This document shows positions 1,671 through 54,991 of a DNA stretch of 64,000 nt, piece after piece (the first letter of the stretch is position 1; each line of letters starts with the position of its first letter). The notes beneath the pieces were generated by a model, which was not told the origin of the DNA, searched no databases, and saw only the letters and a list, made by a program, of their open reading frames with translations. Where the stretch lies: positions 1 to 64,000 of the IMG/VR virus record IMGVR_UViG_3300033183_000491; one strand, 5' to 3'. Position numbers and translations under genes: made by a program.

Positions 1671-2015
1671 TTAATAATCAATTCCTGGAATGTGACCTTT
1701 TGCACGATATGCTGGAGGCCTTCTTTCAGCTCTCATGCGAGCTCTTTCTTCTCTTTCTTGATCTAATCTTTTTGCGTCTTCTTTTGAATAACTTCCTGCA
1801 ACATTACCTGGTTTAATGTTGTTTCTTGTTTCCCAATCGAATAAATCGTTTTCAAATTCTACTTGTCCCATTTCTGTCGGGGAATATTGATCTCTAACAG
1901 GTTTAGGATCATCAGAAAAATCTAGTTGAGATTCGTCAAACTCATCATGAAATTGAGTTGACTCTTTAATAACACTTCTAATGATTTGTCTAAGACGTCT
2001 TTCAGTAATTTTCAT
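1671..2015 (-). CDS. Hypothetical protein with MKITERRLRQIIRSVIKE leader (putative virion-internal protein)
   Basis: Leader is shared with 45385-45750 and 45811-46209. Confidence 0.7.
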   Translation of the reverse strand: MKITERRLRQIIRSVIKESTQFHDEFDESQLDFSDDPKPVRDQYSPTEMGQVEFENDLFDWETRNNIKPGNVAGSYSKEDAKRLDQEREERARMRAERRPPAYRAKGHIPGIDY

Positions 2016-2072
2016 ATTATCTCCAGTTTAATAAACGTTTATATAGTATTATATATTACTTTATAGACAAGT

Positions 2073-2279
2073 TTATTCTATAACTGTTAAAGAAGATCTT
2101 GAAGCAACATCGATAGAGCCATCTTCAAACATAATATCATACTTTGATTGTAACTCTAGATTATCTGATATCGGGAAAGAAAATTTATATTTTCTAATTA
2201 CTAGTACTGTGTTTCCTCTAAAGTTGCACATTTTTCCTGTTAAGTCTTCTTTAGTATTAGAATTTTCTTTCATTTCCAT
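2073..2279 (-). CDS. Small hypothetical protein (SH3-like beta barrel)
   Basis: ORF track; overlaps the ligase stop; alternating beta-strand pattern. Confidence 0.5.
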   Translation of the reverse strand: MEMKENSNTKEDLTGKMCNFRGNTVLVIRKYKFSFPISDNLELQSKYDIMFEDGSIDVASRSSLTVIE

Positions 2280-3549
2280 GAATTACCTTTATAACTGGGA
2301 ATCTTAGTGAATAATCACCATTTTGATTTTGAGTTTCTTCAAAATACTGAACTGTAATAGTTTTATTTAAGATGTCGTTAGGATTTTTATAAAGATGTTT
2401 TCTTTGATCAATAGTAAATCCGCTTCCAACTCGAACTTCATTTCCTTTGTGTTCGATAGAGATGCCACTTAGCATTTCTTCTTCAACTTCAATGCCTTCT
2501 TTAATATATCTAATAGGACCAAAGAAAGCTTGCTTAACAATATACTCATCATCATAAAAAGTTTTTACTTTTAAGATATCATCAGATCTTTTACCTTTAT
2601 ATGTAGAATCCTTTCTAATCATTATTCCTTCCCATCCTTTTTCAGAAGCTTTAGTATTTAATTGTTCTAATTCGCTGAATGATGTTATGGGTGTTTGTTC
2701 AAGGAAGTCAAGATGCTTTAATTTTTTTCCTAAAAGAAGGTTTTGTAACGCTAGAATTCTTTGAGAGAATATACCTGTTTCACTATAACCTTTTGAAAAT
2801 ATTTTGTATGGGATGAAGTCAAAAATCTGAAATAGACCATTATGAATAGTATGGTCTTTTCTTCCTATTTCTTTCATTATGTCTTGAAAGTCTTCGTTTC
2901 CTTCTTCATCTACAATACACATTTCTCCGTCATAAACAATATTTTTTACGCCAAGATTTTCAATTTCTTTTTCTATTAGAGATAAAGTGTGAAATTGTTT
3001 TCCAGACCTAGCAAAAGATTTAGCCTTTCCTTTTTCATCTACGATGATTAAACATCTGACTCCATCAAGTTTTCTTGAGACGTACCAAACATCTTTTTCT
3101 AGATTAATTTTTTTCTTTGTTTTTTCGTCATATTTATTTGCCAAAGCAACATTGAAAGTCGGAATTAATCCAGGACAGGCTTTATTAATAAGTTTTGATG
3201 ATACTCTAATTTTTAAGTTTCTATCTAATATAAGATAGAATAATTCCTTATACTCAGGATTATTCAGAATGAACCCGTTTGATTCTTTTATTGCTTTATG
3301 ACCAGTAATTAATCTTTGGTTTAAAGAGTCAAGCAGATCAAAAATAGAAACAAATTTAGTATCTAAATTAGCTAAGTCTTTTCTTTTTTCTAAGTTTTTA
3401 GAAGTAATATTATATTGCATAAAAGTATTATAGGTATAGTATAAAACTTTTCTTACTTCATGACTTGATGATCTCATAATATCTACTTTATCATTTGAAG
3501 AAGTAGAACAATTCATTTTTAAAATAAAGTCGTTAATATCTTCGATCAC
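2257..3549 (-). CDS. lig: ATP-dependent DNA ligase
   Basis: Motif I SRKLDGVR, YDGE, FQIFD, GWEGIMIR, LKVK; C-terminal OB fold with VGSGFT and SLRFP. Confidence 0.95.
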   Translation of the reverse strand: MIEDINDFILKMNCSTSSNDKVDIMRSSSHEVRKVLYYTYNTFMQYNITSKNLEKRKDLANLDTKFVSIFDLLDSLNQRLITGHKAIKESNGFILNNPEYKELFYLILDRNLKIRVSSKLINKACPGLIPTFNVALANKYDEKTKKKINLEKDVWYVSRKLDGVRCLIIVDEKGKAKSFARSGKQFHTLSLIEKEIENLGVKNIVYDGEMCIVDEEGNEDFQDIMKEIGRKDHTIHNGLFQIFDFIPYKIFSKGYSETGIFSQRILALQNLLLGKKLKHLDFLEQTPITSFSELEQLNTKASEKGWEGIMIRKDSTYKGKRSDDILKVKTFYDDEYIVKQAFFGPIRYIKEGIEVEEEMLSGISIEHKGNEVRVGSGFTIDQRKHLYKNPNDILNKTITVQYFEETQNQNGDYSLRFPVIKVIHGNERKF

Positions 3550-14691: not shown

Positions 14692-15753
14692 CTATCTCTG
14701 TGGATCCTTATAAACTTTAGCGTCGTAGGTGTCATGTGTATATGTTAGGTCTAAAATTTTCAAACTTTCAGGTGATAATGAATTATTTTCTAAGTCAGAT
14801 TTGTCAATCCCGATATTAGCTAAGCTGAAATCGTGATAAAAATTTTCTCCTGTCATTAATAATAGATTTCTAATATCTGGAAAATTTCTTGTTCTTTCTA
14901 ATATAAAGTCATAATCTTCTTTTAAATCACTATATACAGTGGTTTTTCTATCATTTTTGATTTTGTTTCCATTTTTATCAAGTTCATATTCACCGTTTTC
15001 GTCAAGTTTATATTCAGGTTTAGTATAATCAATATAATAAACATCGTCATCTGCCATGTTTTCAATAGCTTCAATAAGATATTCTGATGTAATAGAGTCA
15101 GAAGGAATAAATGACTCTCCAAAAGTTTGTTTAAAATGGCTTGCTAAAGATTTTAGAAATAAATCTAATGTTGATACAAATTGATGAGGATTTAAATCTT
15201 CTCTGAATATTGCTGAAATTGTTGGCAATACTTTTTTAATTTGATCTTTAGTAAGATATAAAATTTCAGTAGCTACTTCTTCACCTTCACCATAAACAGT
15301 CCCAACCTTTTCAGCAAAAATCCAAACTGGATTTTCTTCCAAGTCATAATCATATAACTTTGTAAATACTTTTCTAGACCCAGACCCATAATCACTTTTT
15401 GAAACGTTTATTTCTTTTGAATTTGATCTAACACCTCTTATTCCATTTGCAATCTTTAAGATTACGTCTTCAACACCACGTATAAAGAATACAACTCTTT
15501 GAGCGCCTTCTCCTTTTATTTCAAGACCAAGTTCGTTTGATCTTTTTTCTACTGTCACTAAGAACTCGTGATATCTGTCTTGTCGAAAATTTTCTTGTGA
15601 CCAATTACTATAATCTTCAGAAAAAATTTCATTCTTAATTTTAATTAAATCGTTTTTTAATAAATCTAGTTTTTTACCTTCTTCAAAAGTTAAAGATTCA
15701 TTTAAAAAATCTTTCCAGACATTAAAGAAAAAGTTTTTATCTTTATAACTCAT
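14692..15753 (-). CDS. Protein-kinase-like fold protein (paralog of 21702-22976)
   Basis: GEGAQRVVF Gly loop, VILKIA Lys, NSKE Glu, HDFSLANIG catalytic loop and KILDL. Confidence 0.65.
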   Translation of the reverse strand: MSYKDKNFFFNVWKDFLNESLTFEEGKKLDLLKNDLIKIKNEIFSEDYSNWSQENFRQDRYHEFLVTVEKRSNELGLEIKGEGAQRVVFFIRGVEDVILKIANGIRGVRSNSKEINVSKSDYGSGSRKVFTKLYDYDLEENPVWIFAEKVGTVYGEGEEVATEILYLTKDQIKKVLPTISAIFREDLNPHQFVSTLDLFLKSLASHFKQTFGESFIPSDSITSEYLIEAIENMADDDVYYIDYTKPEYKLDENGEYELDKNGNKIKNDRKTTVYSDLKEDYDFILERTRNFPDIRNLLLMTGENFYHDFSLANIGIDKSDLENNSLSPESLKILDLTYTHDTYDAKVYKDPQR

Positions 15754-15809: not shown

Positions 15810-16097
15810 ATGCTACCATTTAAAGAAAAAATTATTGAAGAAACAGAAACTTACGTTTTAGTTCAAAGAGATTTTAATTCTTTATCAAAAGAAGAAGATT
15901 TAAATTGGCATTTAGATGAAGAAGACAGGGAAATTTTTGTTATTAAAGGTGATGGTTGGTATCTTCAAATGGAAGATGAGTTACCTAAACCTATGCAGAA
16001 ACAATCTTTATTTAAAATACCTAGAGAAATATGGCATAGGATAATTAATAAAAACGGGACAAATTTAATAATAAACGTGAGGAAATATAAATGTTAA
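15810..16097 (+). CDS. Cupin-like small protein
   Basis: WHLDEEDRE...IP..WHRII double-stranded beta-helix motifs. Confidence 0.6.
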   Translation: MLPFKEKIIEETETYVLVQRDFNSLSKEEDLNWHLDEEDREIFVIKGDGWYLQMEDELPKPMQKQSLFKIPREIWHRIINKNGTNLIINVRKYKC

Positions 16098-16309
16098 GCT
16101 TGCTTGAAAGTTTTATATATGAAATAATCATCGAAGAAGGAAACAAACCTCCTAAGTGGTTAAAAAAATCAAAAAAAGCTATTTATAAAGGAAAAATAGT
16201 AAAAGTAATTGAAGCTGATGGTCCTGGCCCAATGTCTATTATTAAATTAAAAAATGGAAAAGGCAAGGTCAAACAAGTTTTATCTAAAGATTTAAAGCCG
16301 GTTAAATAA
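16091..16309 (+). CDS. Basic protein with LLESFIYE leader
   Basis: ORF track; leader family. Confidence 0.6.
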   Translation: MLSLLESFIYEIIIEEGNKPPKWLKKSKKAIYKGKIVKVIEADGPGPMSIIKLKNGKGKVKQVLSKDLKPVK

Positions 16310-16310
16310 A

Positions 16311-16688
16311 ATGAATATTTTGTTAGAATCATATATAAAGGAAATATTATTAAATGAAACAAAGAAAGACCCTAAAGTAGGTACAGGGAAAAAACCTAAA
16401 GGGAGTGGAAGACGTTTATATACAGATGAAAACCCAAAAGATACAGTAAGAGTTAAATTTAGAACTGCTGAAGATATAAGAAAAACTTTATCTAAAAAAT
16501 CATTTAAATCTAAGTCACATGCTAGACAATCTCAAATTATTAATTTAATACATCAAAGAGTTAGAGCAGCTTATAAAAATGCAAAAGACCCTAAAGTCAA
16601 AGCTAGACTTAAAAGAGCATATGACTATGCATGTAAAAGAAAAGAATCTTCTAAGAAAAAAACAAAAAGATTAAATAAGAAAAAGTGA
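16311..16688 (+). CDS. Basic protein with LLESYIKE leader
   Basis: Lys/Arg-rich; leader family. Confidence 0.7.
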   Translation: MNILLESYIKEILLNETKKDPKVGTGKKPKGSGRRLYTDENPKDTVRVKFRTAEDIRKTLSKKSFKSKSHARQSQIINLIHQRVRAAYKNAKDPKVKARLKRAYDYACKRKESSKKKTKRLNKKK

Positions 16689-16697
16689 GTAAGTAAA

Positions 16698-16946
16698 ATG
16701 GAATTTATTTTATTAGAAGAATTTATAAGAGAATTTATATTTAAAGAGTCTAATAAATCAAAAAAGAAAAGACCCGGCAAAAAAGAATATTATAAAGGGA
16801 CAAAAGAAAGCAATAAGTCTATGGCATATGAAATAGACAAATGCAGTCCTACTGGTAAACCTAAGGGTTGGAAGGCACCTAAGTCATGTTACTCTTACTG
16901 GGATGCTGATAAAAAATACGATAAGTCAAAAAAGAAAAAGAAATGA
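16698..16946 (+). CDS. Basic protein with LLEEFIRE leader
   Basis: Lys-rich; leader family. Confidence 0.65.
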   Translation: MEFILLEEFIREFIFKESNKSKKKRPGKKEYYKGTKESNKSMAYEIDKCSPTGKPKGWKAPKSCYSYWDADKKYDKSKKKKK

Positions 16947-17281
16947 ACGATTTAATATTATTAGAAAATTTAATAAAAGAGTTAGTTTTAATTGAAGCTA
17001 AAAAAAGAAAAAAGAAAAAATCAACAACTCTTTCAGATAAAACGAGAAAAACTCTAAAGAAAAAGGCTGAAGATGCTAACATGCCTTTAGGTGCTTTGAC
17101 TGCTGTTTATAGAAAAGGATTAGCTGCTTGGCTTACTGGACATAGACAAGGAGTCTCTCAACATCAATGGGCTATGGGAAGAGTTAATTCTTTTATTAGG
17201 GGTGGAAAAACAAGATCAGTTGATAAAGCTGAATATAAAAAAGTTCAAGACTTTAGAAAAAAGAAGAGAAAGAAAAAATGA
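16943..17281 (+). CDS. Basic protein with LLENLIKE leader
   Basis: VYRKGLAAW...QWAMGRVNSF core; leader family. Confidence 0.7.
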   Translation: MNDLILLENLIKELVLIEAKKRKKKKSTTLSDKTRKTLKKKAEDANMPLGALTAVYRKGLAAWLTGHRQGVSQHQWAMGRVNSFIRGGKTRSVDKAEYKKVQDFRKKKRKKK

Positions 17282-17919: not shown

Positions 17920-18435
17920 TTACTTGGTAACTTTTCTTTCAAATTCACCTTTTAGAAAGTTATTTAATTCTTTATTAATATCAAATTCATTTGGCATAAT
18001 ATCATCTTTTTTAGATTTAAATTTTTCTTTTAGGTAATCTATAAATTTATCTTCTATTTTATCGTCAAGAATCATTGAAGTCTTATCATCTAAGTCAAAC
18101 TGCCCTAGAAATCCTTTAAGACTATCATCGTCATCTCTCTGTGTAAGAACTTTAAGAGCTTCACCAGCATCCATTGTAGTACTCAATACTTCAGACCAAC
18201 CTCCTGTTGCTAGCATTAAAGCAGCTTTCATTGCTGTCTTGCCATATTTTTTAACGTTTTCTTTAGTTTTCAAATTTCCTTTTTCTTTTGTGATAATGTT
18301 TAAAGCATTAATAAAATCTCCGTAAGTCATTTGATTAGATATATCTTCTTCACCGGATACTTCTGTCGACAATTCTTCTTCTTGATTTTGTTCTAAAAGT
18401 AAAAAATTTCTAACATAATCTTTTATAACATTCAT
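17920..18435 (-). CDS. Hypothetical protein with IKDYVRNFLLLE leader
   Basis: ORF track; leader family. Confidence 0.7.
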   Translation of the reverse strand: MNVIKDYVRNFLLLEQNQEEELSTEVSGEEDISNQMTYGDFINALNIITKEKGNLKTKENVKKYGKTAMKAALMLATGGWSEVLSTTMDAGEALKVLTQRDDDDSLKGFLGQFDLDDKTSMILDDKIEDKFIDYLKEKFKSKKDDIMPNEFDINKELNNFLKGEFERKVTK

Positions 18436-33132: not shown

Positions 33133-34076
33133 TAAAAAACTCCGGGAAATAAAAAGTCATTTTTAAATTCGTTAGATTCTTTAAGAGGTTTTTCTTTATA
33201 AGATATTTCTTCAAAAAGAATATTTTTTTCTATATCTTGATCATATAAAATTATTGAATTATTGAAACCTAATTTTTTCTTTATAAATAAAAAGAATTCT
33301 TCATATAAGATATAAGGTAATAAGTTTTCTATACTATTATTAGAAATATCTTTTTCTTTTAATGATATTTTGCATTCAATTTTACTTTTATCGAATTTAA
33401 ATTTTTTTTGAATGTTATCGTATAATTTTATATTAATTTCTTTTTCTTCATAATGAAAAGTCATAGATTTATTAATAATATAAGTTTTAAACTCTCTAAA
33501 ATCTTCTATATAACTTTTTATATGATATTGATTTGGTATTATAATATTATTTGAGCCTATAATTTTACAAATTTTTTCATTAGTTGTGATAGAATTATCT
33601 ACAATAATTGATCTTTTATTTTTTATTGTAAAAACACCGGGTCTATTCTTATACTCACAAAATAAATAAATTCCTCTAATATGAAAAAGCTTATCATTTG
33701 AATATGTAACAGCTATAAATTTGTTTTCATTTTTCTTAAAATTAATACTATCCCAATACTTGTCATCTTTGTTTCTAGAAAACTCTTCTAGAATAACTTT
33801 AATTATACCATAGTCTTCAGAGTCTTCTTTATAATATTGACTTATTGTTTTTAAACATATACCATTTATATCTCGAGTTTTTTTTGTCCTGAAATCGATG
33901 ACGAATTCTTTTTTAATATTAGACCATCTAACAGGATAAATCTTATTAGAATTTAATTCTTGGCATCCCTTTTTTGATATTATTCTCAATACATTTTTAT
34001 AGAACAATAAACACTTGTCAGTAGAGTCAAGATATTTTAAATCATATGGCTTAATGCCATCAATAATGTTAAGCAT
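33132..34076 (-). CDS. Hypothetical protein
   Basis: ORF track. Confidence 0.55.
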   Translation of the reverse strand: MLNIIDGIKPYDLKYLDSTDKCLLFYKNVLRIISKKGCQELNSNKIYPVRWSNIKKEFVIDFRTKKTRDINGICLKTISQYYKEDSEDYGIIKVILEEFSRNKDDKYWDSINFKKNENKFIAVTYSNDKLFHIRGIYLFCEYKNRPGVFTIKNKRSIIVDNSITTNEKICKIIGSNNIIIPNQYHIKSYIEDFREFKTYIINKSMTFHYEEKEINIKLYDNIQKKFKFDKSKIECKISLKEKDISNNSIENLLPYILYEEFFLFIKKKLGFNNSIILYDQDIEKNILFEEISYKEKPLKESNEFKNDFLFPGVF

Positions 34077-34746
34077 TATTTCTTTTAAAGACTTCTAAAA
34101 TTCCAGATTTGTCTTGTTTGTTTTCTCCAATTTTTACAGGAGTATTACTCAACCTTTCAGCTTCTTCTTTAGATTTTTGTTTTCTTGCAATAGATTTTCT
34201 TTTTTCGCTAGTTGCAGATCCATTCTTAGTAATATCGAATTTTAAATCTCGAGGAGAATAAGCAGCACTTCCGTCAACATCCATTAAAGTAACTTGAGTT
34301 AGTCCTTTCATAAAGATATAAAGAACATATTTTTCTCCCGGAGTTAATTTGTTGAAATATTTCTTCATTTCTTCACTAACTTCTGGGTCAGATAAAGAAT
34401 GAGATGCTCTAAATTGATTTAATGATCTAACTAATTCATCAAAATTAGTTGCATTAGACAAAGAAATCGTTGAAGGTGACTCATCAGGAGTACCTACATC
34501 CATATTTACTTCCTTATCATCACTTAATTCATCATCATCACCAGAGATTTTCTTAACGATTTCTTTATCTTCTTCTTCTTCACTATCTTTGGAGTCTTCT
34601 TTAACAGAATCTTTTACAATATCTTTTGCATGAGTTCCTCTTGATCGAGAATCTGCTATAAAACTATTAGCCCTGTCTTCAGCTTTATCCCATGGAGAAT
34701 CTTCATTTAAAATCTCTTTAAGTGAGTTAATAATATCAAAATTCAT
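34069..34746 (-). CDS. Hypothetical protein with LKEILNE leader
   Basis: ORF track; leader family. Confidence 0.65.
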   Translation of the reverse strand: MNFDIINSLKEILNEDSPWDKAEDRANSFIADSRSRGTHAKDIVKDSVKEDSKDSEEEEDKEIVKKISGDDDELSDDKEVNMDVGTPDESPSTISLSNATNFDELVRSLNQFRASHSLSDPEVSEEMKKYFNKLTPGEKYVLYIFMKGLTQVTLMDVDGSAAYSPRDLKFDITKNGSATSEKRKSIARKQKSKEEAERLSNTPVKIGENKQDKSGILEVFKRNNA

Positions 34747-34917: not shown

Positions 34918-35286
34918 TTAGATTTCCTGTTCTTTTAATATAACTATTTTTATTTTATAATTATTTTTCGAAATGAATTTTATTTTCTTTTTAGCTAAAT
35001 GTTTATTTGAATTGATAACTTTTAATTCTTTGTTTCCTAAACACAATTTAATATTAAAATCCGAGTTTGAGATTAATGTCTGTAAAGTGTTTTGATTCGA
35101 CATGAATGTCAACTTATACTTTTTATTACATTCATCTAAAGACAAAACAGATAACTTTTGATTATTGATCTCGATATAAAACTCAAAATCTTTTTCTTGA
35201 TAAGAATTATCAGATAGATTGTTTAAATCTATTAAGTCTTCTAAATCTTCTGAAAGGAATATTCTTTCTTCATTCTTCATTTGCAT
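34918..35286 (-). CDS. Hypothetical protein
   Basis: ORF track. Confidence 0.55.
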   Translation of the reverse strand: MQMKNEERIFLSEDLEDLIDLNNLSDNSYQEKDFEFYIEINNQKLSVLSLDECNKKYKLTFMSNQNTLQTLISNSDFNIKLCLGNKELKVINSNKHLAKKKIKFISKNNYKIKIVILKEQEI

Positions 35287-35629
35287 AATAATACATGACG
35301 TCTTTTTTAATCTTATCTATTTCCTTAGAACACTCTAGTTCAAGCTCAGATATATGATTAGAATAAGCGTGAATTATAATACCTACATTTAAATCTCTAA
35401 ATCTAGTTTCAATATCGACTTCTAGATCACGTTTATATTTTATTATTTCAACTATAAAATTCTCGAAAAATTTTCTATCTTCAAACTTAAATACTTTTTT
35501 AATACTTCTTTCTTCCAAAGACCATTCAGACTTTTTTACATTTAAAGGTCTAAAACTGTTTTCAACTTCAAACTTTTTATTATTTGAAGTCTCATTTAAA
35601 TAGTCAAACATAATATTTTTTAAAATCAT
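35270..35629 (-). CDS. Pterin-4a-carbinolamine dehydratase-like fold protein (degenerate)
   Basis: EW....IKKVFKFED...F...I, then HIS.LELE.SKEID; the catalytic HHP is absent. Confidence 0.45.
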   Translation of the reverse strand: MILKNIMFDYLNETSNNKKFEVENSFRPLNVKKSEWSLEERSIKKVFKFEDRKFFENFIVEIIKYKRDLEVDIETRFRDLNVGIIIHAYSNHISELELECSKEIDKIKKDVMYYYANEE

Positions 35630-38814: not shown

Positions 38815-39192
38815 TTAATCCTGATTTTTGTTTAATATTTTTGTTACTGATGTCCAAACAGCTTTAGCTACTTCGTCTGTTAAATTTTCATTATCACAAT
38901 CGTCAATTATAGAATACAAAGCAGATTGTAATTCTACACTTTTTGGAATGTATTGATTGTCTCTTGTATTAATGTTTCTTACATTTAAATTTATATCAAC
39001 AAAGTTATCACCAGTAATAGGCGGGATGAACTCTTTTTCATGTTCAACCCCATTACCATCGGAGTTTGACTTTTTAATATTTGGTATATCTCTGCTACTA
39101 GTATAGTCATCTGGCATAAACATTTCTTTTAAATGATTTTCAAACAAAATGTCTTTGACAAAACTTCTAAAGTCTTCTTTATTAATACTCAT
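38815..39192 (-). CDS. Hypothetical protein with VKDILFE..LKE leader
   Basis: ORF track; TATAAATA upstream. Confidence 0.65.
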   Translation of the reverse strand: MSINKEDFRSFVKDILFENHLKEMFMPDDYTSSRDIPNIKKSNSDGNGVEHEKEFIPPITGDNFVDINLNVRNINTRDNQYIPKSVELQSALYSIIDDCDNENLTDEVAKAVWTSVTKILNKNQD

Positions 39193-40586: not shown

Positions 40587-41303
40587 TTAAAGTATTTTTG
40601 AAACACTATCAGCTTTTTTAATTCTGTCTTCAATAACAGACCAGTTCAACTCTTTCATCATTCCAAAAACATAGGTTTTTCTATCTTTTAGATAATCTCT
40701 ATAATAACTATGTTCCCAACAATCCATAACTATTACTGGAATCATACCAACCATTACATTTTGACTATGAAGATCTATAATTGTGTTTACAAATCTTTTT
40801 AGATAAATGTCATAGTAAGTAATTGCCCAACCATTTCTAGCAGAAAGACAACATGCTACAAAATCTTCTTGCCAAGAATCAAATGTACCAAAATCTCTAG
40901 ATAATCTCATATAAGAAAGAGAATCCATAGTAATACTACTATTTAAATCACTTATATTTTCAAAATATAGGCCGTGTAGAAAAGCTGCGTTGTGATTATA
41001 AGACTCATCTATTTTAAGACTTCTAAAATTAGAATTATTAAGATTAGCTGATGTTTTATCTACGCCGTCTAATGAAGAAGATATTTTATTTAATTTTTCA
41101 ATATAACCTTCAAGTAATTCTTGATGAGCTTTTTTTGTTTTAGAAGATAACAATTCAGTCTGTAAACTAAAACTTCCAGGTTCTACAACGTAAGATTCAT
41201 TTAAACTTTCTTTTTTTGATTCACTATCACTATGGTTTATAGAGCTTTGATCATTCATAGTATTATCAATAGCTTCTTTTATTATTTGATCTAAACTTTT
41301 CAT
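40587..41303 (-). CDS. sod: Fe/Mn superoxide dismutase with N-terminal extension
   Basis: AHQELLEGY, NAAFLHGLYF, GWA and MDCWEHSYYRDY. Confidence 0.88.
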   Translation of the reverse strand: MKSLDQIIKEAIDNTMNDQSSINHSDSESKKESLNESYVVEPGSFSLQTELLSSKTKKAHQELLEGYIEKLNKISSSLDGVDKTSANLNNSNFRSLKIDESYNHNAAFLHGLYFENISDLNSSITMDSLSYMRLSRDFGTFDSWQEDFVACCLSARNGWAITYYDIYLKRFVNTIIDLHSQNVMVGMIPVIVMDCWEHSYYRDYLKDRKTYVFGMMKELNWSVIEDRIKKADSVSKIL

Positions 41304-42248: not shown

Positions 42249-42704
42249 ATGAATAATCTACTTAAAGAATATGTTTATAATATTATATTAGAAAATAAAA
42301 AAAATACAAGAAATTTATATGTCTTTGATTTTGACATGACTTTATATGATCCAAATAATAAATTATGGATTGATAAATCGATAAGCGAACTTAACAAAGT
42401 CAAAAATAACAATTTGATTGTTTTATGTACAGCAAGATTAAACTCTAGCGAAATCATAAAAGAAACAAAAAAACTTCTTAAAGAAAAAAATATAAAGTTT
42501 GATTATTACTATTTTAAACCTAGATCTATTACAATGTCTACACATGAATATAAAAAAGGAGTAATTGAAAAGTTAATAAATGAAAACAATATCGAAGAAA
42601 TTTATTTCTGGGAAGATAATTTAAAAAATCTAAGTGCAGTTAAAGATATAAAAGAAATTAAATCAGGAAAAATAAAATACTATCCTAAATTAGTTAAAAT
42701 ATAA
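42249..42704 (+). CDS. HAD-family phosphatase-like protein
   Basis: VFDFDMTL, CTAR, K and FWEDN; carries the LLKEY leader. Confidence 0.75.
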   Translation: MNNLLKEYVYNIILENKKNTRNLYVFDFDMTLYDPNNKLWIDKSISELNKVKNNNLIVLCTARLNSSEIIKETKKLLKEKNIKFDYYYFKPRSITMSTHEYKKGVIEKLINENNIEEIYFWEDNLKNLSAVKDIKEIKSGKIKYYPKLVKI

Positions 42705-45136: not shown

Positions 45137-45385
45137 ATGAAAAATTTAATAGAGACTTATATAAATTTTTTTCTAGAAAATAACAATTCAGATGATAGAC
45201 CTTTTGTAGACTTCATGAAAGATATTGAAAAAGAAGAAAAAGACAAAAAAAATAATGATCGTGTTGAAAATACTAAACCTAACATCAAAAAAGAAGATAA
45301 TATTAATATCTTAAGAAATCCTAATGATAATCTTTTATTTTACAGAAAAATTAAAAATAAGAAAAATAAGCCTGGAGAAAACTAA
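45137..45385 (+). CDS. Hypothetical protein with LIETYINFFLE leader
   Basis: ORF track; leader family. Confidence 0.6.
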   Translation: MKNLIETYINFFLENNNSDDRPFVDFMKDIEKEEKDKKNNDRVENTKPNIKKEDNINILRNPNDNLLFYRKIKNKKNKPGEN

Positions 45386-45750
45386 TGAAAATTACAGAAA
45401 CAAAATTAAGAAATTTAATAAGGAAAGTTATCTTAGAAAATAACATGACTTATTTAGAATTTGGTCAAAATCTAATTGAAGGTGAACCTATTGATAGAAT
45501 AAATCCCGGTTATGGTTTATATCTTGTAACTGGTGAAGACTTTTATGAAGAAACTGTTGGTGGAAGAGTTATCGAAAAATTTGATGTTTATGTTTGCGAA
45601 GGACCATATAAACAGATTGATGAACTTGAAGTAAGAAAGTATGACGATAGTTCATTATTAAAATTGAGGAATAATTTAGTTTTTGTAAAACAATCAGATA
45701 AAGAATATCGCATCCCAGTTTCAGAAGCTAAAACACCTGAATTTGATTAA
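45385..45750 (+). CDS. Hypothetical protein with MKITETKLRNLIRKVILE leader
   Basis: Leader family. Confidence 0.7.
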   Translation: MKITETKLRNLIRKVILENNMTYLEFGQNLIEGEPIDRINPGYGLYLVTGEDFYEETVGGRVIEKFDVYVCEGPYKQIDELEVRKYDDSSLLKLRNNLVFVKQSDKEYRIPVSEAKTPEFD

Positions 45751-45789: not shown

Positions 45790-45810
45790 TAATCTTAAAG
45801 GAAAATTAAA

Positions 45811-46209
45811 ATGAAAATTACAGAAAGACGTTTACGCTCAATTATTAAGAACATTATTAAAGAACAAAGCGATATAAATCCTCGTGGCGCCCGTGCAGCA
45901 GGACCAGATCTTCAACAAAAGTATTCTGTAGATCTTATTAACACTCTTAGACAATGTAACACACTCTCAGATATTCATGCCCTAATGAAAAAAGACGGAT
46001 TTAGCGAAGAAGATTTCGAAGATGAAAGAAGTAATTCATACCAATATTTTTGGTTTTTATATATATCAGTATGTCAAACTTTAGAGGATTTACAACGCGA
46101 AGGTTATAAAGTAGGATTTGTTATGAAACTTGATCAATGGCCTTGGTATACAGCAGATGCAAAGGAACCTTCTTCAGGAGAAGATTATTGTGCAATCTTG
46201 TTAAAATAA
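45811..46209 (+). CDS. Hypothetical protein with MKITERRLRSIIKNIIKE leader
   Basis: Leader family. Confidence 0.7.
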   Translation: MKITERRLRSIIKNIIKEQSDINPRGARAAGPDLQQKYSVDLINTLRQCNTLSDIHALMKKDGFSEEDFEDERSNSYQYFWFLYISVCQTLEDLQREGYKVGFVMKLDQWPWYTADAKEPSSGEDYCAILLK

Positions 46210-47308: not shown

Positions 47309-47330
47309 TATAAACCTTTCTTTTTAATTT

Positions 47331-47359
47331 ATTGTACATAATTAATTTTTTGTTTACAC
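47331..47359 (-). promoter_or_regulatory. Promoter GTGTAA-N17-TACAAT for dnaE-C
   Basis: The -35 box coincides with the endonuclease's last codon and stop (GTG TAA). Confidence 0.65.
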
Positions 47360-48340
47360 ATAAGACTTTCCAAATAACCATAATCCTCTTGTTTTATTAA
47401 GAATAATACTTTCTATTTTGTCTAATGTTTCTTTATTAAACGTACCATTTTCTTTATATTCATATTCATCATGAGAAATCCTAATTACAGTCCAACCTTC
47501 TTCTATTAAGACTTCATTTAATTCTTTGTCTTTTTTTGTAACTTCACTAAGATTTCCTTTTTTCTTAAACACGTCTTTAAAATGATGTATACCGTCAAAT
47601 TCAATAACTATTTTATTTTCTAATGACATAATATCAATCTGTCTAGTGTTTGTCTTAGTTGATAAAAACTTTCCTGTTCTTTTAAGTGTTTGATTTCTTT
47701 TAAAAGTATTAGGAAAGTTTTTATCAACAATGTTAAATAAATCACCTTCAGGTTTAGACTGCCAAGATTTATGCATAACTGAGGTGCATTTTTTATAAAA
47801 TTCTCCCGGGTTATTCTTTCGCCATTCTGCAAGTCTATTTGATCTTTCTTTTTGGATATCTTTCCTACTTGAAGTTTTTTTAGCAGTCCTCGAAGATCTT
47901 TCTCTAAATTCTTGCGTTTTGTTTAAATTAGAAAGATTTTTTCTTCTTGATTCTCTAGCAAACTCTGAATTCATAATTCCTTTAGAAATAGATTTTCCTA
48001 ATTTTTCAATGTATTCTGAAAGATCCTCGCCTTTTTCTTTTTTTCTAGATATCCATGCTCCGTTTTTCTTTCCTGACATTGAATATTTATTTTTAGATTT
48101 TTCACACATCGCTAAGCCATATTTTAATTCATATTCTTCTTTACTTAAATTATGATTTTTAATATGTAATTTTATATTTTTTCTTACAAATCCACAAATT
48201 TGACATTTTACATAATCAATATTTTCTTTGTAATTTTCTAATATAAATTTACATTTTTCTTGATGGCTTTTTAATGTCGATTCTTTTATATAAGATTTTC
48301 CACACACACAATCGAAAGATCTTCTTGAATTATCAACCAT
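47354..48340 (-). mobile_element. Free-standing homing endonuclease (Zn fingers + Vsr/EDxHD-like nuclease) between the dnaE halves
   Basis: CVCGK...HQEKC, CQICG...H; SKPE, QIDI, IEFDGIHH, KDKELN and GWTVIRI. Confidence 0.88.
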
Positions 48341-51258
48341 AATGGAAGCATCCTTCCATCTTCAACTCTAAACTTGTGATGCATTGTACATTCAACACTT
48401 TTATCATTTTCCAGCGTAATCTTGAATGTTGGAACTTCTCCATGATCATGGTTTGCCAAAACCTGTGTAAATATATCTTCCTTTTTTTCTTCATCTCTTG
48501 ACTTAACGTAAACTCCAGGGACAACATCTTTAATCTCTTTCGTAGATAAATAATTTCCTTCGTGATCATAAGTATCTATTAAAGTATTAAATAGTAAACT
48601 TTTATTGAAGCCGTAAACAGCGAAACCTTCTATCTCTTCCCAAAGTTTTCTTGATATGTGTTCAGGAACATCATTAATTTCTTTTGCGCCTTTAATAAAC
48701 TTTTCTCTTGCAATTGTTTTTTCATCTTTTTTATTTCCCATAGTTGCAAGATTGTTTTTAACAAGTGTTTTTCTTAACTTGTCAGCTTCACCAGGGTCAA
48801 AACCAGATAGTTTTTGTGCAAGAAGCATAAATTGCTCTTGAAAAACAACATAAGAGAAAGTTGGTCCTAAAACTTCTTCAATAATTGGATGGTCATATTT
48901 AATCTGGTCAGCATTTTGTTTAGATTTAACATATTTCTTGTGAACGTTAGCTTTAAGAGGTCCTGGTCGATAAATTGCTGTAAGTGCAGCTAGTTCTTCA
49001 ATATTCTCTGGTTTTGCTTCTAGAGAGAAGTTTCTTGCGCCAGAATTTGTAAATTGAAATATTCCTACAAATCTTCCATCGTGATATACATGTTTCCAAA
49101 CCTCTTGATCATTTTGGTCGTGAAATCTACAGTTAAGATGTTTGTCAAAAAATTCTTTTGCATCTGAAAAAGTTGGGTTTTTATTGCCTTGTTTTTTCAA
49201 GATTTTATAGATACAATTTTCAATGTCTTTTAGTAATGATAACCCCAAGAAATCAAACTTAATAAATCCATTATCTTCTAGATTTCTAAAGTTTAATCCT
49301 TCTGACCAAGGAGTTTGTAATTCGCCACGAACACCGACAATAGGCATTGTTGTTTCTAAATGTTCTGGATCAGCTACAAGAACTCCTCCTGCGTGACGTC
49401 CAATTGCTCTATTTTGCATAAACAAAGAAGCAATATGCGTTTCTACTTCAGGATACCTTTCCATAAAGTCTTTATATTCAGACGAATATTTTTTACAATC
49501 TTCATGTTTAAGAACAAACACAGATTTTTCTTGATCATCACCTTTAGCCATTTTCATGACTTGTTCTTGAAGAGGTCCAGTAACTTTATTAACTTCATCA
49601 AAAGGAATATCGTAAAATTTTGAAATATCTTTAACTAGAGATTTAAGTTTAAGAGTATTAAAATTTGAAACAGGAATAACAGCATCATTACCATATAATT
49701 CTTTTGCTGCGTTAATTAATTCATCACGATCACCTGCATCCGTATCAATGTCAGGCCAACTAACTCTATGTCGCCCTAAAAATCTAGCCCAAAGAAGATC
49801 GTATGGCAAAGGATCAACTTGCGTAATACCTAACAAATAATTAACTAAAGATCCCGCACCTGAGCCTCTTCCTGGACCAAGTAATGTTTTCTTTTCAGCA
49901 CGTTTAAATATTTCATACATCGTAATAAAATAAGCTTCATGTCCAAGATATTTTATATCTGAAAGTTCTTCTTTAGCTCTTTCAACATATTCTTTATTCG
50001 TATGAAGATTATGTTCGATAAGAGATTCTTTAACTAAAGAAGACAAATGCTGAAATGGTGTTTTGTTTGGTACGTTAATTGTTGGAAGTTTAACTCCTGT
50101 ATCAATCCATGTATCTTCAAACTCATTCCAAACAATATCGTGAGTTCTATTAATAGCATCACTAACAAGTTGCTCATTACCTTTATAAAAATCATATAAT
50201 GGATATGAATCTAAAAATTCATCCCACATTTGTGATGCATTCTTTGGATATAATTCGCATTTAAGGTCTTCAAACTCAGGTAAAGTAAGATTGTCTCTTT
50301 TACCTAACCATCCAAGTTTTTTATATAGTTCTCTTGCTTGCCATTTTTCATTTGAAGGATAATGCGAATCTGCTGTACAGATAAGTGGAATACCTGTTAA
50401 CTTGTGATGTTCAATAAGATAGTCATTAACAGTATGCTGTTTTTCTAATTTATTAAATTGAAGTTCTAATTTAAAATTATTTTCGCCAACGCAAGAAACA
50501 AATCTATCTGTTAGGTTTAATAATTCTTTTTGAATTTGCTCGCGAGATTGATTATGTACTTCACCTCTTAGAATACGATTACTAAAAAGTCCGCCAAGAC
50601 ATGCGGTTGATATATGTAATCCTTCACCATGTTCTTGAAGCATTTGAAAATCAATACGAGGATATCTATAAAACCCGTATTTATAAGATTTTTTAACTAA
50701 AGTAAATAAATTGTGAAGACCTTTTTGGTTTCTTGCAGTTACGACAAGATGATAGCGTCGTTTCCATTCGTCTTTAAGAATATCTACGTTTTTTGTTTCG
50801 TCTTCGTCCTCGACAACTAAACCACCACTTTCATCATCTGCATCAATGTCAATTTTCTCTTTAGACTTCTTTTCAGCTGCAGCAGCTGTCTTAGCATCTT
50901 GAATAGCTTGTTTATGTGCGGCATAATCTTCTTTCCATTGCTGAAGAGATGGAACAAAATAAAATTCAACACCATAAATTTGTCTAAATTTTCTTCCAGA
51001 CTTTTGCATTCTAACTGCATGAGATCGTGCATGCGCAAGTCCATTACCATTACCATGATCAGTTAATGCCCATGCATCCATACCTTGAGATTCTGATATT
51101 ACAAAATCAATGTGGTCTGAAGGATATCCTAATCCATCAAATGTAGATACCTAGGAGAAGGTTGAATGGGCATGCAAACCAACGAATCTGTCGGGTCTAA
51201 GCATATCAAGTTCAACCTTCTCTAGGTACCTCCTTTCTGTTTTAAATGTATTATTCAT
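48286..51258 (-). CDS. dnaE: DNA polymerase III alpha, N-terminal half (PHP + polymerase + IntN), with in-frame TAG at 51151-51153
   Basis: An ATG at 51258 (or 51204) is in frame with the 931-aa ORF; FVGLHAHSTFS-TAG-VS-TFDG, LTDHG, GVE, TADSHY, GRGSGAGSL, WPDIDTD, FDFLGL and YGFNK. Confidence 0.9.
48289..48600 (-). mobile_element. Split intein N-fragment (104 aa)
   Basis: Begins after YGFNK with Ser1 (SLLFNT); block B CTMHHKF; ends at a TAA. Confidence 0.9.
51145..51231 (-). other. 21-bp hairpin in dnaE mRNA enclosing the premature UAG
   Basis: Arms at 51211-51231 and 51145-51166: 12 bp, a bulged C, then 9 bp with one G-U pair; 44-nt loop. Confidence 0.9.
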
Positions 51259-52553: not shown

Positions 52554-52573
52554 AATAATCCTTTTTTTGTTTT

Positions 52574-52603
52574 ATTATATTGAATTAATATTTATATTTA
52601 CAC
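52574..52603 (-). promoter_or_regulatory. Promoter GTGTAA-N18-TATAAT
   Basis: Upstream of the photolyase-like gene. Confidence 0.75.
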
Positions 52604-52621
52604 AAATAAAAAAGGATTATT

Positions 52622-54991
52622 ATGAATACAAAAAATTTATTAAGAGAATGGAAGACTTTTCTTCTCAATGAACATAAAGTTTTTTCTTTACAAGAAATTA
52701 TTCAAACATTAATACAATCTCAAAGAAGTGAAAAAGAAGTTGCTTATCTTAAAGATTTTTGGATTAATAATAGATTTATTACAAAATATACACAAGTCAT
52801 TCGAGACGAAATTAAATATACTCATGAACCGATTGAAGAAATATTAGATGTTTGCGAGTTACATTACGAAAAAATATATCAATCTGCAGGCCCAGATATT
52901 AAAGATCAAATAGGCAGCGGAAATATTACTATAGACGATCTTAGAAAGCAAATAGATTTTAATTTTAATTTTAATAAAAATGAAATTAGACAACAATGTG
53001 ACTACCAGAATAATAGACCTGTGGTTGGAAATTATCAAGATTTTGATATAGTATATAGTGAATCAGATTTTATAGTGATAGAGCCTAAAACAACAAAAGG
53101 TTCAATAGCTTGGGCTCATGGTAAACCTGACGGTTCAGAAGAAACTGATCAAGATAGAAGAGTAGGTTGGTGCACAGGAGTCTCTTCAGTCAACAATATG
53201 TTTCAAAACTATGCAGGTGATTTACACATGTTTTATGTTATTAATACAGATTATGATAATGATAATTCTAAGAATAGAAGAATATGTTTGTCATTCGTCG
53301 TTATAAATGGTGAGCCTTCCCTTAAAGAAGAATCTTTTTCAACTGTTAATGCTTTAAATAAATCGATAGACAAAGAAGACATAGAAAATATTAAAAATCA
53401 AAAATTCTATCAGAACATCTTAGAAAGACTTCAAGGTAGAAAAGAAACCTCATATCAAAATATTTATAGTAAAGCTTCTATAGGACAAATTATAAGAATT
53501 ATAAAACAGATGAAAAGAAACAATCTTAGTGATAATTTATTAGACGAAGAAATAAAAAATTATATAAGATATACTGAATTTGACGATGTGCTATTACATT
53601 TTTTTCAAGATAAAAAATACGAAGAAATAATTACACGTAAAGTTTCTAAAGATAATGTAAGATTTGATAATACATTTAAAAAAGTATTAGAAATAGACGA
53701 ACTTTTACCGATAGTTGCAAAATATACTCAAGATCAAGATATAATTAAATTTTTAATTTCAAAAAAAATGTTTAATATAAATTGGGAACTTTTCCATAAT
53801 GAAAATGTTGACGAATCAATAAAAAAAGAATTATCTGACTATATTGTTCCTCCTTATGAGACTTTTAATAAAGAAACTCCCATACAAGATTTAATTCATT
53901 TTATAGGACTTTTTCTCAAAAGCCAAAGCACAAAATCTACTATTTTAGAAAATATCTTTAAAAATGTTTCATATGATAATTTAAAAAATATATTTTATTT
54001 ATTATTTATAGAAAAAGACGCAGATGAAATTATTGGTAAATCATTCATTGGAAATGACCATAGTCTTAAAAGCAAAAAAAATCTTTATTGTCAAATCATT
54101 TTATATATTAAAAAAATCAATCCAGAAAAATTTTCTCAAAATTTTGATTTTTGGCTTGACTTATTAATAAATAACTTCTTCACAGATAAAATTCTGGAAA
54201 ACTTTGAAATAAGTTATTTATTATCCGATGTAAATCTAAACGATAGACAAGTAAACAAACTCATCAGACTTTCTATGAGTTTAACAGCAATACCAAATAA
54301 TCGATCAAATGTTAAGTTAATAACATGCTTATATAGTCTCGATCTTAGTGACACTCAAAATAAAAAAATTAACAGCATAATAGAATTTGAAAATGAATAT
54401 TTTTCTAGCAAAATATTCAATAATATTTATTATAACTTAGATAAGTTAAATAACTTTGATATATATGATTTTTCTTTAGAGTTGTTTAATAGTTCAAACG
54501 AATCTCAAAAAAGTTATCTATCACTTGCTGTTCAAAAAGCTCTTGGTGAGTTTTGTCCAGAACTAATTAGTAATTATACAAATAATAGTATTCCTAACTA
54601 TTTAAAACTTTTGTCTGAAGAATGTCTAGATTTACCTTATGAAGAATATAGCAAACTATTTCATCAAGCTAATTTTGATGATTTTGTAAAAGAATTCAAT
54701 AGCGAAAGTTATGAATTTTATGACAAATACATTGAATTCATAGAATATTTTCGTGAATGTAATATAGTTCAAGAAAACCCTGAAGGTGTGTATAATCTTT
54801 TTAAATCAATAGGAATAGATCTTTCTAGTGAAAGATCACTTGAATATTTCTTTTATGGTTTTGAATTTGATGATGTGGAGGAATGTAAAGAGATGTTTGA
54901 GAATGAGCCTTACTTAAAACCAATTTTTGGTCGAAACATAGACTTAAATGAATCTTTATTGAAAAAATATATTAGCTTACTAATTTTTTAA
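52622..54991 (+). CDS. Large hypothetical protein with LLREWKTFLLNE leader and a leader-like C-terminus
   Basis: IVIEP....SIAW....GWCT core; ends LNESLLKKYISLLIF. Confidence 0.7.
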   Translation: MNTKNLLREWKTFLLNEHKVFSLQEIIQTLIQSQRSEKEVAYLKDFWINNRFITKYTQVIRDEIKYTHEPIEEILDVCELHYEKIYQSAGPDIKDQIGSGNITIDDLRKQIDFNFNFNKNEIRQQCDYQNNRPVVGNYQDFDIVYSESDFIVIEPKTTKGSIAWAHGKPDGSEETDQDRRVGWCTGVSSVNNMFQNYAGDLHMFYVINTDYDNDNSKNRRICLSFVVINGEPSLKEESFSTVNALNKSIDKEDIENIKNQKFYQNILERLQGRKETSYQNIYSKASIGQIIRIIKQMKRNNLSDNLLDEEIKNYIRYTEFDDVLLHFFQDKKYEEIITRKVSKDNVRFDNTFKKVLEIDELLPIVAKYTQDQDIIKFLISKKMFNINWELFHNENVDESIKKELSDYIVPPYETFNKETPIQDLIHFIGLFLKSQSTKSTILENIFKNVSYDNLKNIFYLLFIEKDADEIIGKSFIGNDHSLKSKKNLYCQIILYIKKINPEKFSQNFDFWLDLLINNFFTDKILENFEISYLLSDVNLNDRQVNKLIRLSMSLTAIPNNRSNVKLITCLYSLDLSDTQNKKINSIIEFENEYFSSKIFNNIYYNLDKLNNFDIYDFSLELFNSSNESQKSYLSLAVQKALGEFCPELISNYTNNSIPNYLKLLSEECLDLPYEEYSKLFHQANFDDFVKEFNSESYEFYDKYIEFIEYFRECNIVQENPEGVYNLFKSIGIDLSSERSLEYFFYGFEFDDVEECKEMFENEPYLKPIFGRNIDLNESLLKKYISLLIF

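What the first reader, a model, noticed from the sequence alone, without database searches (positions are those of the whole stretch)
1671..54991. Shared N-terminal leader on about 20 unrelated proteins: candidate capsid-targeting and protease-cleavage signal
Otherwise unrelated ORFs begin with an amphipathic helix ending in hydrophobic-x-Glu. Examples are MKITERRLRQIIRSVIKE (1671), MKITETKLRNLIRKVILE (45385), MKITERRLRSIIKNIIKE (45811), LLESYIKEILLNE (16311), LLEEFIREFIFKE (16698), LLENLIKELVLIE (16943), IKDYVRNFLLLE (17920), LLKEYVYNIILE (42249), LLREWKTFLLNE (52622), VWKDFLNE (14692) and LKEILNE (34069). T4 prohead protease gp21 cleaves after (I/L)-x-E and T4 internal proteins carry a short capsid-targeting leader, so these may be head-packaged, ejected effectors. 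The cargo would include a kinase-like protein, a HAD phosphatase and SOD. The 789-aa protein also ends in a leader-like string (LNESLLKKYISLLIF).
Basis: partly seen in the sequence, partly recalled or inferred. Interest (0 to 1): 0.65.

Follow-up and report, generated by a model that had tools for sequence, protein, structure and literature searches.

The report
Head-targeting leader peptides of a jumbo phage
A 240-kb marine T4-like phage puts the same short N-terminal helix, ending in the cut site of its own head protease, on about 27 otherwise unrelated proteins, most likely to load them into the capsid as T4 does with its internal proteins.

Summary
The window is the first 64 kb of a 239,550-bp, 29% GC phage genome. 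That genome carries a T4-type head module: Gp23 capsid protein, T4 portal, terminase and a Peptidase_S77 (gp21-type) prohead protease with its catalytic His and Ser in place.

- **Count:** 14 window genes carry a clear leader and 2 a weaker one. Genome-wide there are about 27.
- **Form:** the leader is a 13-26-residue amphipathic N-terminal helix ending in (L/I/F)-x-Glu.
- **Enrichment:** A 211-kb relative repeats this (9/277 vs 1/3429). Unrelated AT-rich viral contigs do not.
- **Modularity:** bodies are mostly unrelated, leaders differ by synonymous codons, and two neighbouring genes share an identical 42-nt leader before diverging abruptly.
- **Cut site:** in 58 homologues of one cargo (DUF5824), P1 is always Glu, P3 is always hydrophobic and P2 varies. 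This is the T4 gp21 rule.
- **Contrast:** a podovirus homologue of that cargo has no leader.

Best reading: T4-style capsid-targeting propeptides, on an unusually large scale. Packaging, cleavage and ejection remain untested. The leader-like C-terminus of the 789-aa protein is not supported.

The parts
1671..2015 (-). 114-aa ORFan with a KITE-type leader (18 aa, nt 1962-2015), ending I-K-E
   Evidence: The same leader sits on different bodies in 17 IMG/VR loci.
14692..15753 (-). 353-aa protein, kinase-like as a lead only, with a W-type leader (19 aa, nt 15697-15753), ending L-N-E
   Evidence: The G1 orthologue keeps the leader. Paralogue of genome 201929.
16091..16309 (+). 72-aa basic protein (mature pI 10.4), leader nt 16091-16138
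   Evidence: (10.8 bits, held out). Fused with the next gene in G1, where only V-N-E remains at the junction.
16311..16688 (+). 125-aa basic protein (mature pI 10.9), leader nt 16311-16358, ending L-N-E
16698..16946 (+). 82-aa basic protein (mature pI 9.9), leader nt 16698-16748, ending F-K-E
   Evidence: In metagenome homologues this body is fused to the next one with a leader-like stretch between them.
16943..17281 (+). 112-aa basic DUF5824 protein (mature pI 11.2), leader nt 16943-16996, ending L-I-E then A
   Evidence: AF2 model: helix 2-21, weak linker, compact helical domain 32-111.
17920..18435 (-). 171-aa acidic ORFan, leader nt 18391-18435, ending L-L-E
34069..34746 (-). 225-aa ORFan, short leader nt 34702-34746, ending L-N-E
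   Evidence: leader 73% identical in G1, body 49%
35270..35629 (-). 119-aa ORFan, weaker candidate leader nt 35591-35629, ending L-N-E
   Evidence: kept in L005 and G1. HMM score only 2.8 bits.
38815..39192 (-). 125-aa ORFan, leader nt 39139-39192, ending L-F-E
   Evidence: (10.5 bits, held out)
40587..41303 (-). Fe/Mn superoxide dismutase with an N-terminal extension of about 36 aa (nt 41196-41303). Weak candidate: the first site has Asp, and a second site L-N-E lies just before the SOD fold.
   Evidence: Sod_Fe_C at residues 133-227; orthologues have L-S-E and V/L-S-E
42249..42704 (+). 151-aa HAD-type phosphatase, leader nt 42249-42293, ending I-L-E
   Evidence: Orthologues in L005, G1 and L098 keep a leader of different sequence.
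45137..45385 (+). 82-aa ORFan, leader nt 45137-45178, ending F-L-E
   Evidence: No counterpart at this site in L005 and no G1 hit.
45385..45750 (+). 121-aa ORFan, KITE-type leader nt 45385-45438, ending I-L-E
45811..46209 (+). 132-aa ORFan, KITE-type leader nt 45811-45864, ending I-K-E
52622..54991 (+). 789-aa ORFan, W-type leader nt 52622-52672, ending L-N-E. The leader-like C-terminal tail is not supported.
   Evidence: (paralogue of genome 113170). The relative L005 has a different 291-aa leader protein at this site.

Best explanation
The leaders are T4-type N-terminal propeptides, that is, capsid-targeting sequences. Each is a 13-26-residue amphipathic helix. During head assembly the helix would bind the protein to the scaffolding core of the prohead. 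The helix ends in (L/I/F)-x-Glu. After the shell closes, the phage's gp21-type serine protease (Peptidase_S77, genome 122607-123209) would cut after that Glu and free the mature protein inside the head.

The four tandem, very basic small proteins at 16091-17281 would then behave like T4 internal proteins bound to the packaged DNA. The larger cargo (HAD phosphatase, kinase-like protein, possibly SOD, many ORFans) would travel with the DNA and probably enter the host on infection.

Shown here: the leaders exist, are enriched, occur at N-termini or at fusion junctions, and are modular. Their P3 and P1 positions are invariant. The genome has the matching protease and head module.

Inferred, not shown: binding to the core, cleavage, packaging and ejection.
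For: 1. T4-type head module: Gp23, Peptidase_S77, Portal_T4 and terminase. The protease is 36% identical to T4 gp21 over 143 aligned residues, with the equivalents of His85 and Ser140 conserved.
2. Held-out N-terminal enrichment in this genome and in relative G1, and none in unrelated AT-rich viral contigs.
3. In 58 DUF5824 homologues that carry the leader, P1 is Glu in 58/58, P3 is L/I/M/V/F in 58/58, P2 varies and P1' is Ala or Gly in 42/58. T4 gp21 cuts after L/I-x-E, first seen at a Glu-Ala bond (PMC9026906).
4. Strictly N-terminal: all 10 KITE-pattern matches in six-frame translations of three genomes are at ORF starts. All 17 IMG/VR loci found with a 9-residue pattern (18 matches) are at ORF starts, nearly all on diverse bodies (one is a 33-aa ORF), and all but one continue the leader to hydrophobic-x-E, three others ending earlier than at the usual position.
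5. Modularity: the KITE leaders use synonymous codons and their upstream DNA is not conserved. Genes 203734 and 204615 share an identical 42 nt and then diverge, as T4 ipII and ipIII share an identical 30-nt leader. A homologous body in G1 carries a different leader class.
6. Fusion evidence: metagenome proteins join the 16698-like and DUF5824 bodies with an internal leader-like stretch between them. G1 fuses 16091 and 16311 and keeps only V-N-E at the junction.
7. The DUF5824 protein of podovirus HTVC202P has no leader. In the T4-like phage Melnitz the DUF5824-containing protein starts much like the T4 leader.
8. Head-module proteins next to the protease carry the motif: 121786, 121413, and an internal site in 119929 that is conserved in G1. 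The protease and capsid protein N-termini resemble the W-type leader.
9. Mature pI is 9.9-11.2 for the four tandem proteins.
10. Lineage link: 3 of 5 long leader-bearing contigs encode S77. The other two, and two shorter ones, are fragments of the same lineage.
Against: - No experimental evidence of packaging or cleavage exists for this phage or any relative that I could find.
- The leader is not detectably similar in sequence to the T4 leaders; T4 head-protein N-termini score under 5 bits with the profile.
- The protease-leader complex prediction gave no answer.
- About 9% of all genes carrying the tag is far more than in T4. Cargo such as SOD or a HAD phosphatase has no known role inside a capsid.
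- The promoter-word test is weak: TATATAA upstream of 12/44 structural genes, 4/17 leader genes and 5/81 others.
- Some weak leaders could be chance, because the loose motif occurs in 4.5% of internal windows.
Confidence: 0.7

Rival explanations
1. The shared helix is a protein-protein or membrane-association module with no link to the capsid. It might drive oligomerisation, serve as a docking tag for another phage machine such as the encoded cpn60 chaperonin, or act as an activation peptide removed in the cytoplasm.
For: The helix is amphipathic with heptad-like spacing and is predicted as a free helix on a flexible linker. Cargo includes soluble enzymes. No direct evidence ties it to heads.
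Against: - This does not explain the invariant Glu with invariant hydrophobic P3 and free P2.
- It does not explain the same motif in proteins of the head module and at fusion junctions.
- It does not explain the missing leader in a podovirus homologue.
- So far the leader occurs only in a lineage that encodes S77.
Confidence: 0.15
2. The similarity is a by-product of gene duplication and recombination at gene starts, or of selection on the mRNA (translation start region), with no function for the peptide.
For: Two neighbouring genes share an identical 42-nt start. Two pairs of leader proteins are true paralogues.
Against: - The KITE leaders differ at synonymous sites while keeping the peptide, and their upstream DNA is not conserved.
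- The peptide pattern survives in a 53% GC relative, with Arg replacing Lys.
- Leaders are more conserved than bodies (58% vs 40% identity).
- The leader also occurs inside fusion proteins.
Confidence: 0.05
3. The leaders are export signals (Sec, Tat or lipoprotein signal peptides) or membrane anchors.
For: They are N-terminal and partly hydrophobic. The genome does encode true lipoprotein-like signals elsewhere, for example the ORFs at 680-1504 and 23282-25027.
Against: - The sequences carry charged residues every 3-4 positions, and the longest uncharged hydrophobic run is about 4-5 residues.
- There is no A-x-A or lipobox.
- The motif recurs internally in fusion proteins.
Confidence: 0.03
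4. The pattern is a chance product of the AT-rich, Lys/Ile/Leu/Glu/Asn-rich proteome.
For: A loose hydrophobic-x-E rule is only 2-fold enriched at N-termini. The octapeptide of one leader class occurs mostly at internal, unrelated places in IMG/VR.
Against: - The held-out profile tests give p = 8e-7 and 6e-10.
- The control contigs are negative.
- 18/18 and 10/10 pattern matches lie at ORF starts.
- The motif is conserved in a 53% GC relative.
Confidence: 0.02

Closest known systems
Capsid targeting sequence (CTS) of phage T4 internal proteins IPI, IPII, IPIII and Alt, removed by prohead protease gp21
   Same: - Short N-terminal propeptide; 10-20 residues in T4 (PMC5694885).
- Ends in L/I-x-E (PMC9026906).
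- Sits on otherwise unrelated, partly very basic proteins (PMC3012670).
- The leader DNA is identical between two neighbouring genes: T4 ipII/ipIII share 30 nt, and here 203734/204615 share 42 nt.
- The protease is of the same family.
   Different: - The consensus differs and is somewhat longer (13-26 aa), falling into three recognisable classes (KITE, LLENYIKE and W types).
- There is no detectable sequence similarity to the T4 leader.
- About 27 tagged genes, against a handful in T4.
- Function is inferred here and proven in T4.
Long propeptides of head and ejection proteins in giant phages phiKZ, 201phi2-1 and SPN3US, cut by gp175/gp245
   Same: A jumbo phage in which many head proteins are processed after Glu by a gp21-related protease. 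The propeptides are thought to target proteins into the prohead (PMC5694885, PMC9026906).
   Different: In those phages most propeptides exceed 100 residues and P3 is Ala, Ser or Gly (PMC5694885). Here the leaders are short and P3 is Leu or Ile, as in T4. The head module here is T4-like in sequence.
Cargo-loading peptides of encapsulins (from general knowledge, not tested here)
   Same: A short peptide tag directs unrelated enzymes into an HK97-fold protein shell.
   Different: The encapsulin tags are usually C-terminal, are not removed by a protease, and the shell holds no DNA. This is an analogy of principle only.

Membership tests
T4-type capsid-targeting propeptide system (CTS plus gp21 protease) | The genome encodes a gp21-type prohead serine protease within a T4-type head module | tested here: met
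   Peptidase_S77 at E = 1.7e-28, next to Portal_T4, Gp23 and terminase. His85 and Ser140 equivalents are conserved (residue numbers are counted in the alignment, and their catalytic role is from general knowledge of T4 gp21).
T4-type capsid-targeting propeptide system (CTS plus gp21 protease) | A short propeptide (10-20 residues) at the extreme N-terminus | tested here: met
   Leaders are 13-26 residues. All pattern matches lie at ORF starts. The length range for T4 comes from PMC5694885.
T4-type capsid-targeting propeptide system (CTS plus gp21 protease) | The propeptide ends in the protease motif L/I-x-E | tested here: met
   In the genome's 27 leaders P3 is L 17, I 7, F 2, Y 1. In 58 DUF5824 homologues P1 is E in 58/58 and P3 is hydrophobic in 58/58.
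T4-type capsid-targeting propeptide system (CTS plus gp21 protease) | The same leader sits on otherwise unrelated proteins (a modular tag) | tested here: met
T4-type capsid-targeting propeptide system (CTS plus gp21 protease) | Sequence similarity of the leader to the T4 CTS | tested here: not met
   T4 head-protein N-termini score <=4.9 bits with the leader profile. Only the hydrophobic-x-x-hydrophobic-hydrophobic-x-E pattern is shared. The ipII/ipIII leader itself (MKTYQEFIAE, read from the T4 record) was not put to the profile.
T4-type capsid-targeting propeptide system (CTS plus gp21 protease) | The tagged proteins are incorporated into proheads and the leader is removed by the protease | not testable with these tools
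   This needs virion mass spectrometry or a cleavage assay. The one complex prediction gave no answer.
T4 internal proteins (small basic DNA-associated head proteins) | Small, strongly basic mature proteins carrying the leader, encoded in a variable cluster | tested here: met
   For 16091-17281 the mature parts are 56-109 aa with pI 9.9-11.2. The genes are split or fused differently in relatives. No sequence homology to T4 IPs was sought or claimed.
phiKZ/SPN3US-type long propeptides | Propeptides over 100 residues with A/S/G at P3 | tested here: not met
   Leaders are 13-26 residues and P3 is L/I/F.
Sec/Tat/lipoprotein signal peptides | An uninterrupted hydrophobic core of 7-15 residues followed by a signal-peptidase site | tested here: not met
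   Read directly from the sequences: charged residues every 3-4 positions, with no A-x-A or lipobox.

The most novel reading that the evidence does not exclude
A whole lineage of uncultured marine jumbo T4-like phages loads roughly a tenth of its encoded proteins into the capsid through three interchangeable leader classes and ejects them with the DNA. The load would include enzymes such as a kinase-like protein, a HAD phosphatase, an Fe/Mn SOD and a lysozyme-like protein. If so, the leader is a sequence tag that lets one read the injected effector set of uncultured phages straight from metagenomes.
Probability: 0.35. Interest if true: 0.75.

Novelty: new variant of a known kind. Interest (0 to 1): 0.55.

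Why it matters
T4's capsid-targeting sequence is the textbook case of a peptide tag that loads arbitrary proteins into a phage head. It has been described for a handful of proteins in T-even phages.

If these leaders work the same way, a distant marine jumbo lineage uses the principle on about 27 genes per genome. The consensus is different and easy to recognise, and it recurs in many viral metagenome contigs.

That would give a purely sequence-based way to list the proteins a phage carries into the cell. These are candidate anti-defence and host-takeover factors, and the phages concerned cannot yet be grown. It would also offer new, longer targeting tags for packaging foreign proteins.

Tried and rejected
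- **Complex prediction:** protease with the first 40 residues of the 16311 protein gave no answer, score 0.00. This is evidence neither for nor against.
- **tblastn against isolated phages:** a KITE protein and its 24-residue leader found no match.
- **Word search with the 45811 protein:** only two close relatives.
- **Foldseek of the DUF5824 model against the PDB:** no match at E <= 0.001; the cargo fold stays unknown.
- **Pfam and PHROGs on leader proteins:** mostly no family.
- **T4 head-protein N-termini:** they do not score with the leader profile.
- **Upstream k-mers as a late-promoter test:** the trend is weak and the numbers too small.
- **Loose seed-free motif:** only 2-fold enriched.
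- **Octapeptide of the LLENYIKE class in IMG/VR:** 69 matches, only about 12 near ORF starts and the rest in unrelated proteins, so this short word is not diagnostic.
- **Leader-like C-terminus of the 789-aa protein:** not conserved in the paralogue, and C-termini score no higher than internal tiles (best 9.6 bits).
- **Cluster look-up for named relatives of the DUF5824 protein:** no names.
- **Terminase search in five leader-bearing fragments:** nothing, because they cover the non-structural half. A lineage-specific 1053-aa protein showed that four of them belong to the same lineage.

Full report
**What the window is.** The 64-kb window is the start of a single 239,550-bp contig with 29% G+C. 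Outside the window the genome has a T4-type head module:
- a Gp23 major capsid protein (E = 7e-78);
- a Peptidase_S77 prohead protease, the family of T4 gp21 (E = 1.7e-28, genome 122607-123209);
- a T4-type portal and a T4-type large terminase.

The nearest capsid proteins in the isolated-phage collection are an uncultured huge phage (40% identity) and Rhodothermus phage RM378 (34%). This is therefore a distant T4-like jumbo phage. The protease is 36% identical to T4 gp21 over 143 aligned residues, and the motifs holding His85 and Ser140 of gp21 are conserved (GELDHP and GISSRG).

**The observation.** A simple gene call adds more leaders in the window, at 16091, 38815 and 45137, with weaker ones at 35270 and on the SOD at 40587. 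Thirteen more lie in the rest of the genome.

Three classes can be seen:
- a KITE type (M-K-I-T-E-x-x-L-R-x-I-I-x-x-I-x-E);
- an LLENYIKE type;
- a W type (L-L-x-E-W-x-x-F-L-x-E).

All end in a hydrophobic residue, any residue, then Glu. In the 27 clearest leaders P3 is Leu 17, Ile 7, Phe 2, Tyr 1.

- At 10 bits or more it finds 7 of 291 other N-termini and 3 of 3839 internal 30-residue tiles (p = 8e-7).
- Two of those three internal tiles are one site in a head-module protein.
- A 211-kb relative from IMG/VR (G1) gives 9 of 277 against 1 of 3429 (p = 6e-10). Its single internal hit is the orthologous site in the same head protein.
- In 378 kb of other AT-rich viral contigs only 1 of 471 N-termini passes, and that one lies on a contig that also carries a leader-bearing HAD-like gene.
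- A loose 'hydrophobic stretch then hydrophobic-x-E' rule is only 2-fold enriched. The short examples are weak on their own.

**A peptide-level, modular element.**
- With the leaders removed, the 27 bodies show only two related pairs by BLASTP.
- The three KITE leaders differ at synonymous codon positions and their upstream DNA is not conserved.
- Genes 203734 and 204615 share an identical 42-nt leader and then diverge abruptly. T4 ipII and ipIII do the same with their 30-nt leader.
- Between this genome and G1 the leaders are 58% identical and the bodies 40%. The KITE matches rest on the leader alone. One homologous body carries a W-type leader in G1 and an LLENYIKE-type leader here.
- A degenerate DNA pattern for nine residues of the KITE leader found 17 IMG/VR loci (18 matches). 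Every match is at an ORF start. All but one continue the leader beyond the pattern to hydrophobic-x-E; 14 end at the usual 18th residue, three end earlier, and one is a 33-aa ORF that loses the leader. The bodies differ.
- In six-frame translations of three genomes, a KITE regular expression matches 10 times, always at an ORF start. This includes a 53% G+C relative in which Arg replaces Lys.

**Link to the head protease.**
- Three of five long KITE-bearing contigs encode Peptidase_S77. The other two, and two shorter ones, are fragments of under 50% completeness that carry the lineage-specific 1053-aa protein of the window. I found no leader-bearing genome that demonstrably lacks the protease.
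- Small proteins encoded between the protease and the capsid gene carry the motif at their N-termini (121786, 121413). A 285-aa head-module protein carries it internally, and that site is conserved in G1.
- The N-termini of the protease and of the capsid protein resemble the W-type leader and the corresponding T4 sequences.
- The capsid protein has L-L-E and L-R-E sites 19-28 residues before the first block that aligns with T4 gp23. T4 cuts 33 residues before that block.

**The DUF5824 cargo as a natural experiment.** The 112-aa protein at 16943 has 199 relatives with E <= 0.001, of which the best 120 are listed.
- In an alignment of 60 of them, 58 have a leader. In those, P1 is Glu in 58/58, P3 is hydrophobic in 58/58 (Leu 46), P2 varies, and P1' is Ala or Gly in 42.
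- A basic linker of very variable length, absent in some homologues and tens of residues long in others, follows the leader.
- This is the published gp21 rule: L/I-x-E, first seen at a Glu-Ala bond (PMC9026906).
- Several relatives are fusions of the neighbouring 16698-like body and the DUF5824 body, with a leader-like stretch kept between them. G1 fuses 16091 and 16311 and keeps only V-N-E at the joint.
- The DUF5824 protein of the Pelagibacter podovirus HTVC202P has no leader. In the T4-like phage Melnitz the DUF5824-containing protein begins much like the T4 leader.
- An AlphaFold model places the leader in a separate helix (residues 2-21), joined by a low-confidence linker to a compact helical domain. 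No solved fold matched.

**Cargo.**
- The four tandem genes at 16091-17281 give mature proteins of 56-109 residues with pI 9.9-11.2, like T4 internal proteins.
- The 42249 protein is HAD-like.
- The 40587 protein is an Fe/Mn SOD with an N-terminal extension of about 36 residues. Its first site has Asp in this genome but Glu in two relatives.
- 'Kinase-like' for 14692 is only a lead from look-alike clusters.
- A 466-aa leader protein outside the window has a weak lysozyme hit.
- Leader genes sit in variable spots. The relative L005 has one gene where the window has three (45137-46209), and a different 291-aa leader protein where the window has the 789-aa one.

**Mechanism and known systems.** In T4 the first 10 residues of IPIII suffice for packaging. 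Residues 4 and 7 matter for targeting and residues 8 and 10 for processing. Asp at position 10 blocks cutting but not targeting (PMC9026906). T4 internal proteins are diverse, sharing only the leader (PMC3012670). T4 propeptides are 10-20 residues long, whereas most phiKZ-type propeptides exceed 100 residues and have Ala, Ser or Gly at P3 (PMC5694885).

The leaders here fit the T4 pattern in place, length, cut site and modularity. They do not fit in sequence, and they occur on far more genes. I therefore file this as a new variant of the T4 capsid-targeting system, with confidence 0.7. Packaging, cleavage and ejection are inferences.

**What is not supported.**
- The leader-like C-terminus of the 789-aa protein.
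- The count of about 20 in the window; I find 14 clear and 2 weak.

The complex prediction gave no answer.

Noticed in passing
window 46232-51081 (-): The DNA polymerase III alpha gene is split. ORF 48286-51081 holds PHP, the NTPase and the finger domains. ORF 46232-47308 holds the HHH_6 part. A 328-aa ORF with DUF559 (Vsr-like endonuclease) and a zinc-finger-like hit lies between them. The start of the downstream piece looks like the C-terminal block of an intein, so this may be a split-intein 'fractured gene'. The relative L005 has the same layout.
   Followed up: partly
genome 66386-70418 (L001:2386-6418): A second possibly fractured gene lies just outside the window. One ORF starts with an intein-like C-terminal block, and a 252-aa ORF with a GIY-YIG-like start sits between two larger ORFs. 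This was read from the sequence only.
   Followed up: no
genome 109658-109894 (L002:1658-1894, -): A 78-aa protein near the head module is built almost wholly of three leader-like repeats, two of them identical 21-residue copies. It could be a core protein that is cut into peptides.
   Followed up: partly
window 26980-28611 (-) and 25962-26711 (-): The phage encodes a cpn60/GroEL-type chaperonin and a sigma-70 family factor with regions 1.2, 2 and 3.
   Followed up: partly
window 10040-13631 (-): Three purine-nucleotide genes lie in a row: a Lyase_1 family protein (adenylosuccinate-lyase-like), adenylosuccinate synthetase, and an IMP dehydrogenase/GMP reductase family protein.
   Followed up: partly
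window about 45749-45784 (+): Three tandem copies of a 12-nt unit lie directly upstream of the leader gene at 45811.
   Followed up: no
window 67-1504 (-) and 23282-25027 (-): Several ORFs start with classical lipoprotein-type signal peptides (a hydrophobic core followed by Ser-Cys). These are clearly different from the leaders discussed here.
   Followed up: no
L114 (Methylophilales phage Melnitz, MZ577097.1 14525-16866): Two adjacent genes of this T4-like marine phage both begin M-K-K-F-S-E, close to the T4 ipII/ipIII leader. One of them carries a DUF5824 domain inside a 650-aa protein. This suggests T4-type leaders in that phage family too.
   Followed up: partly
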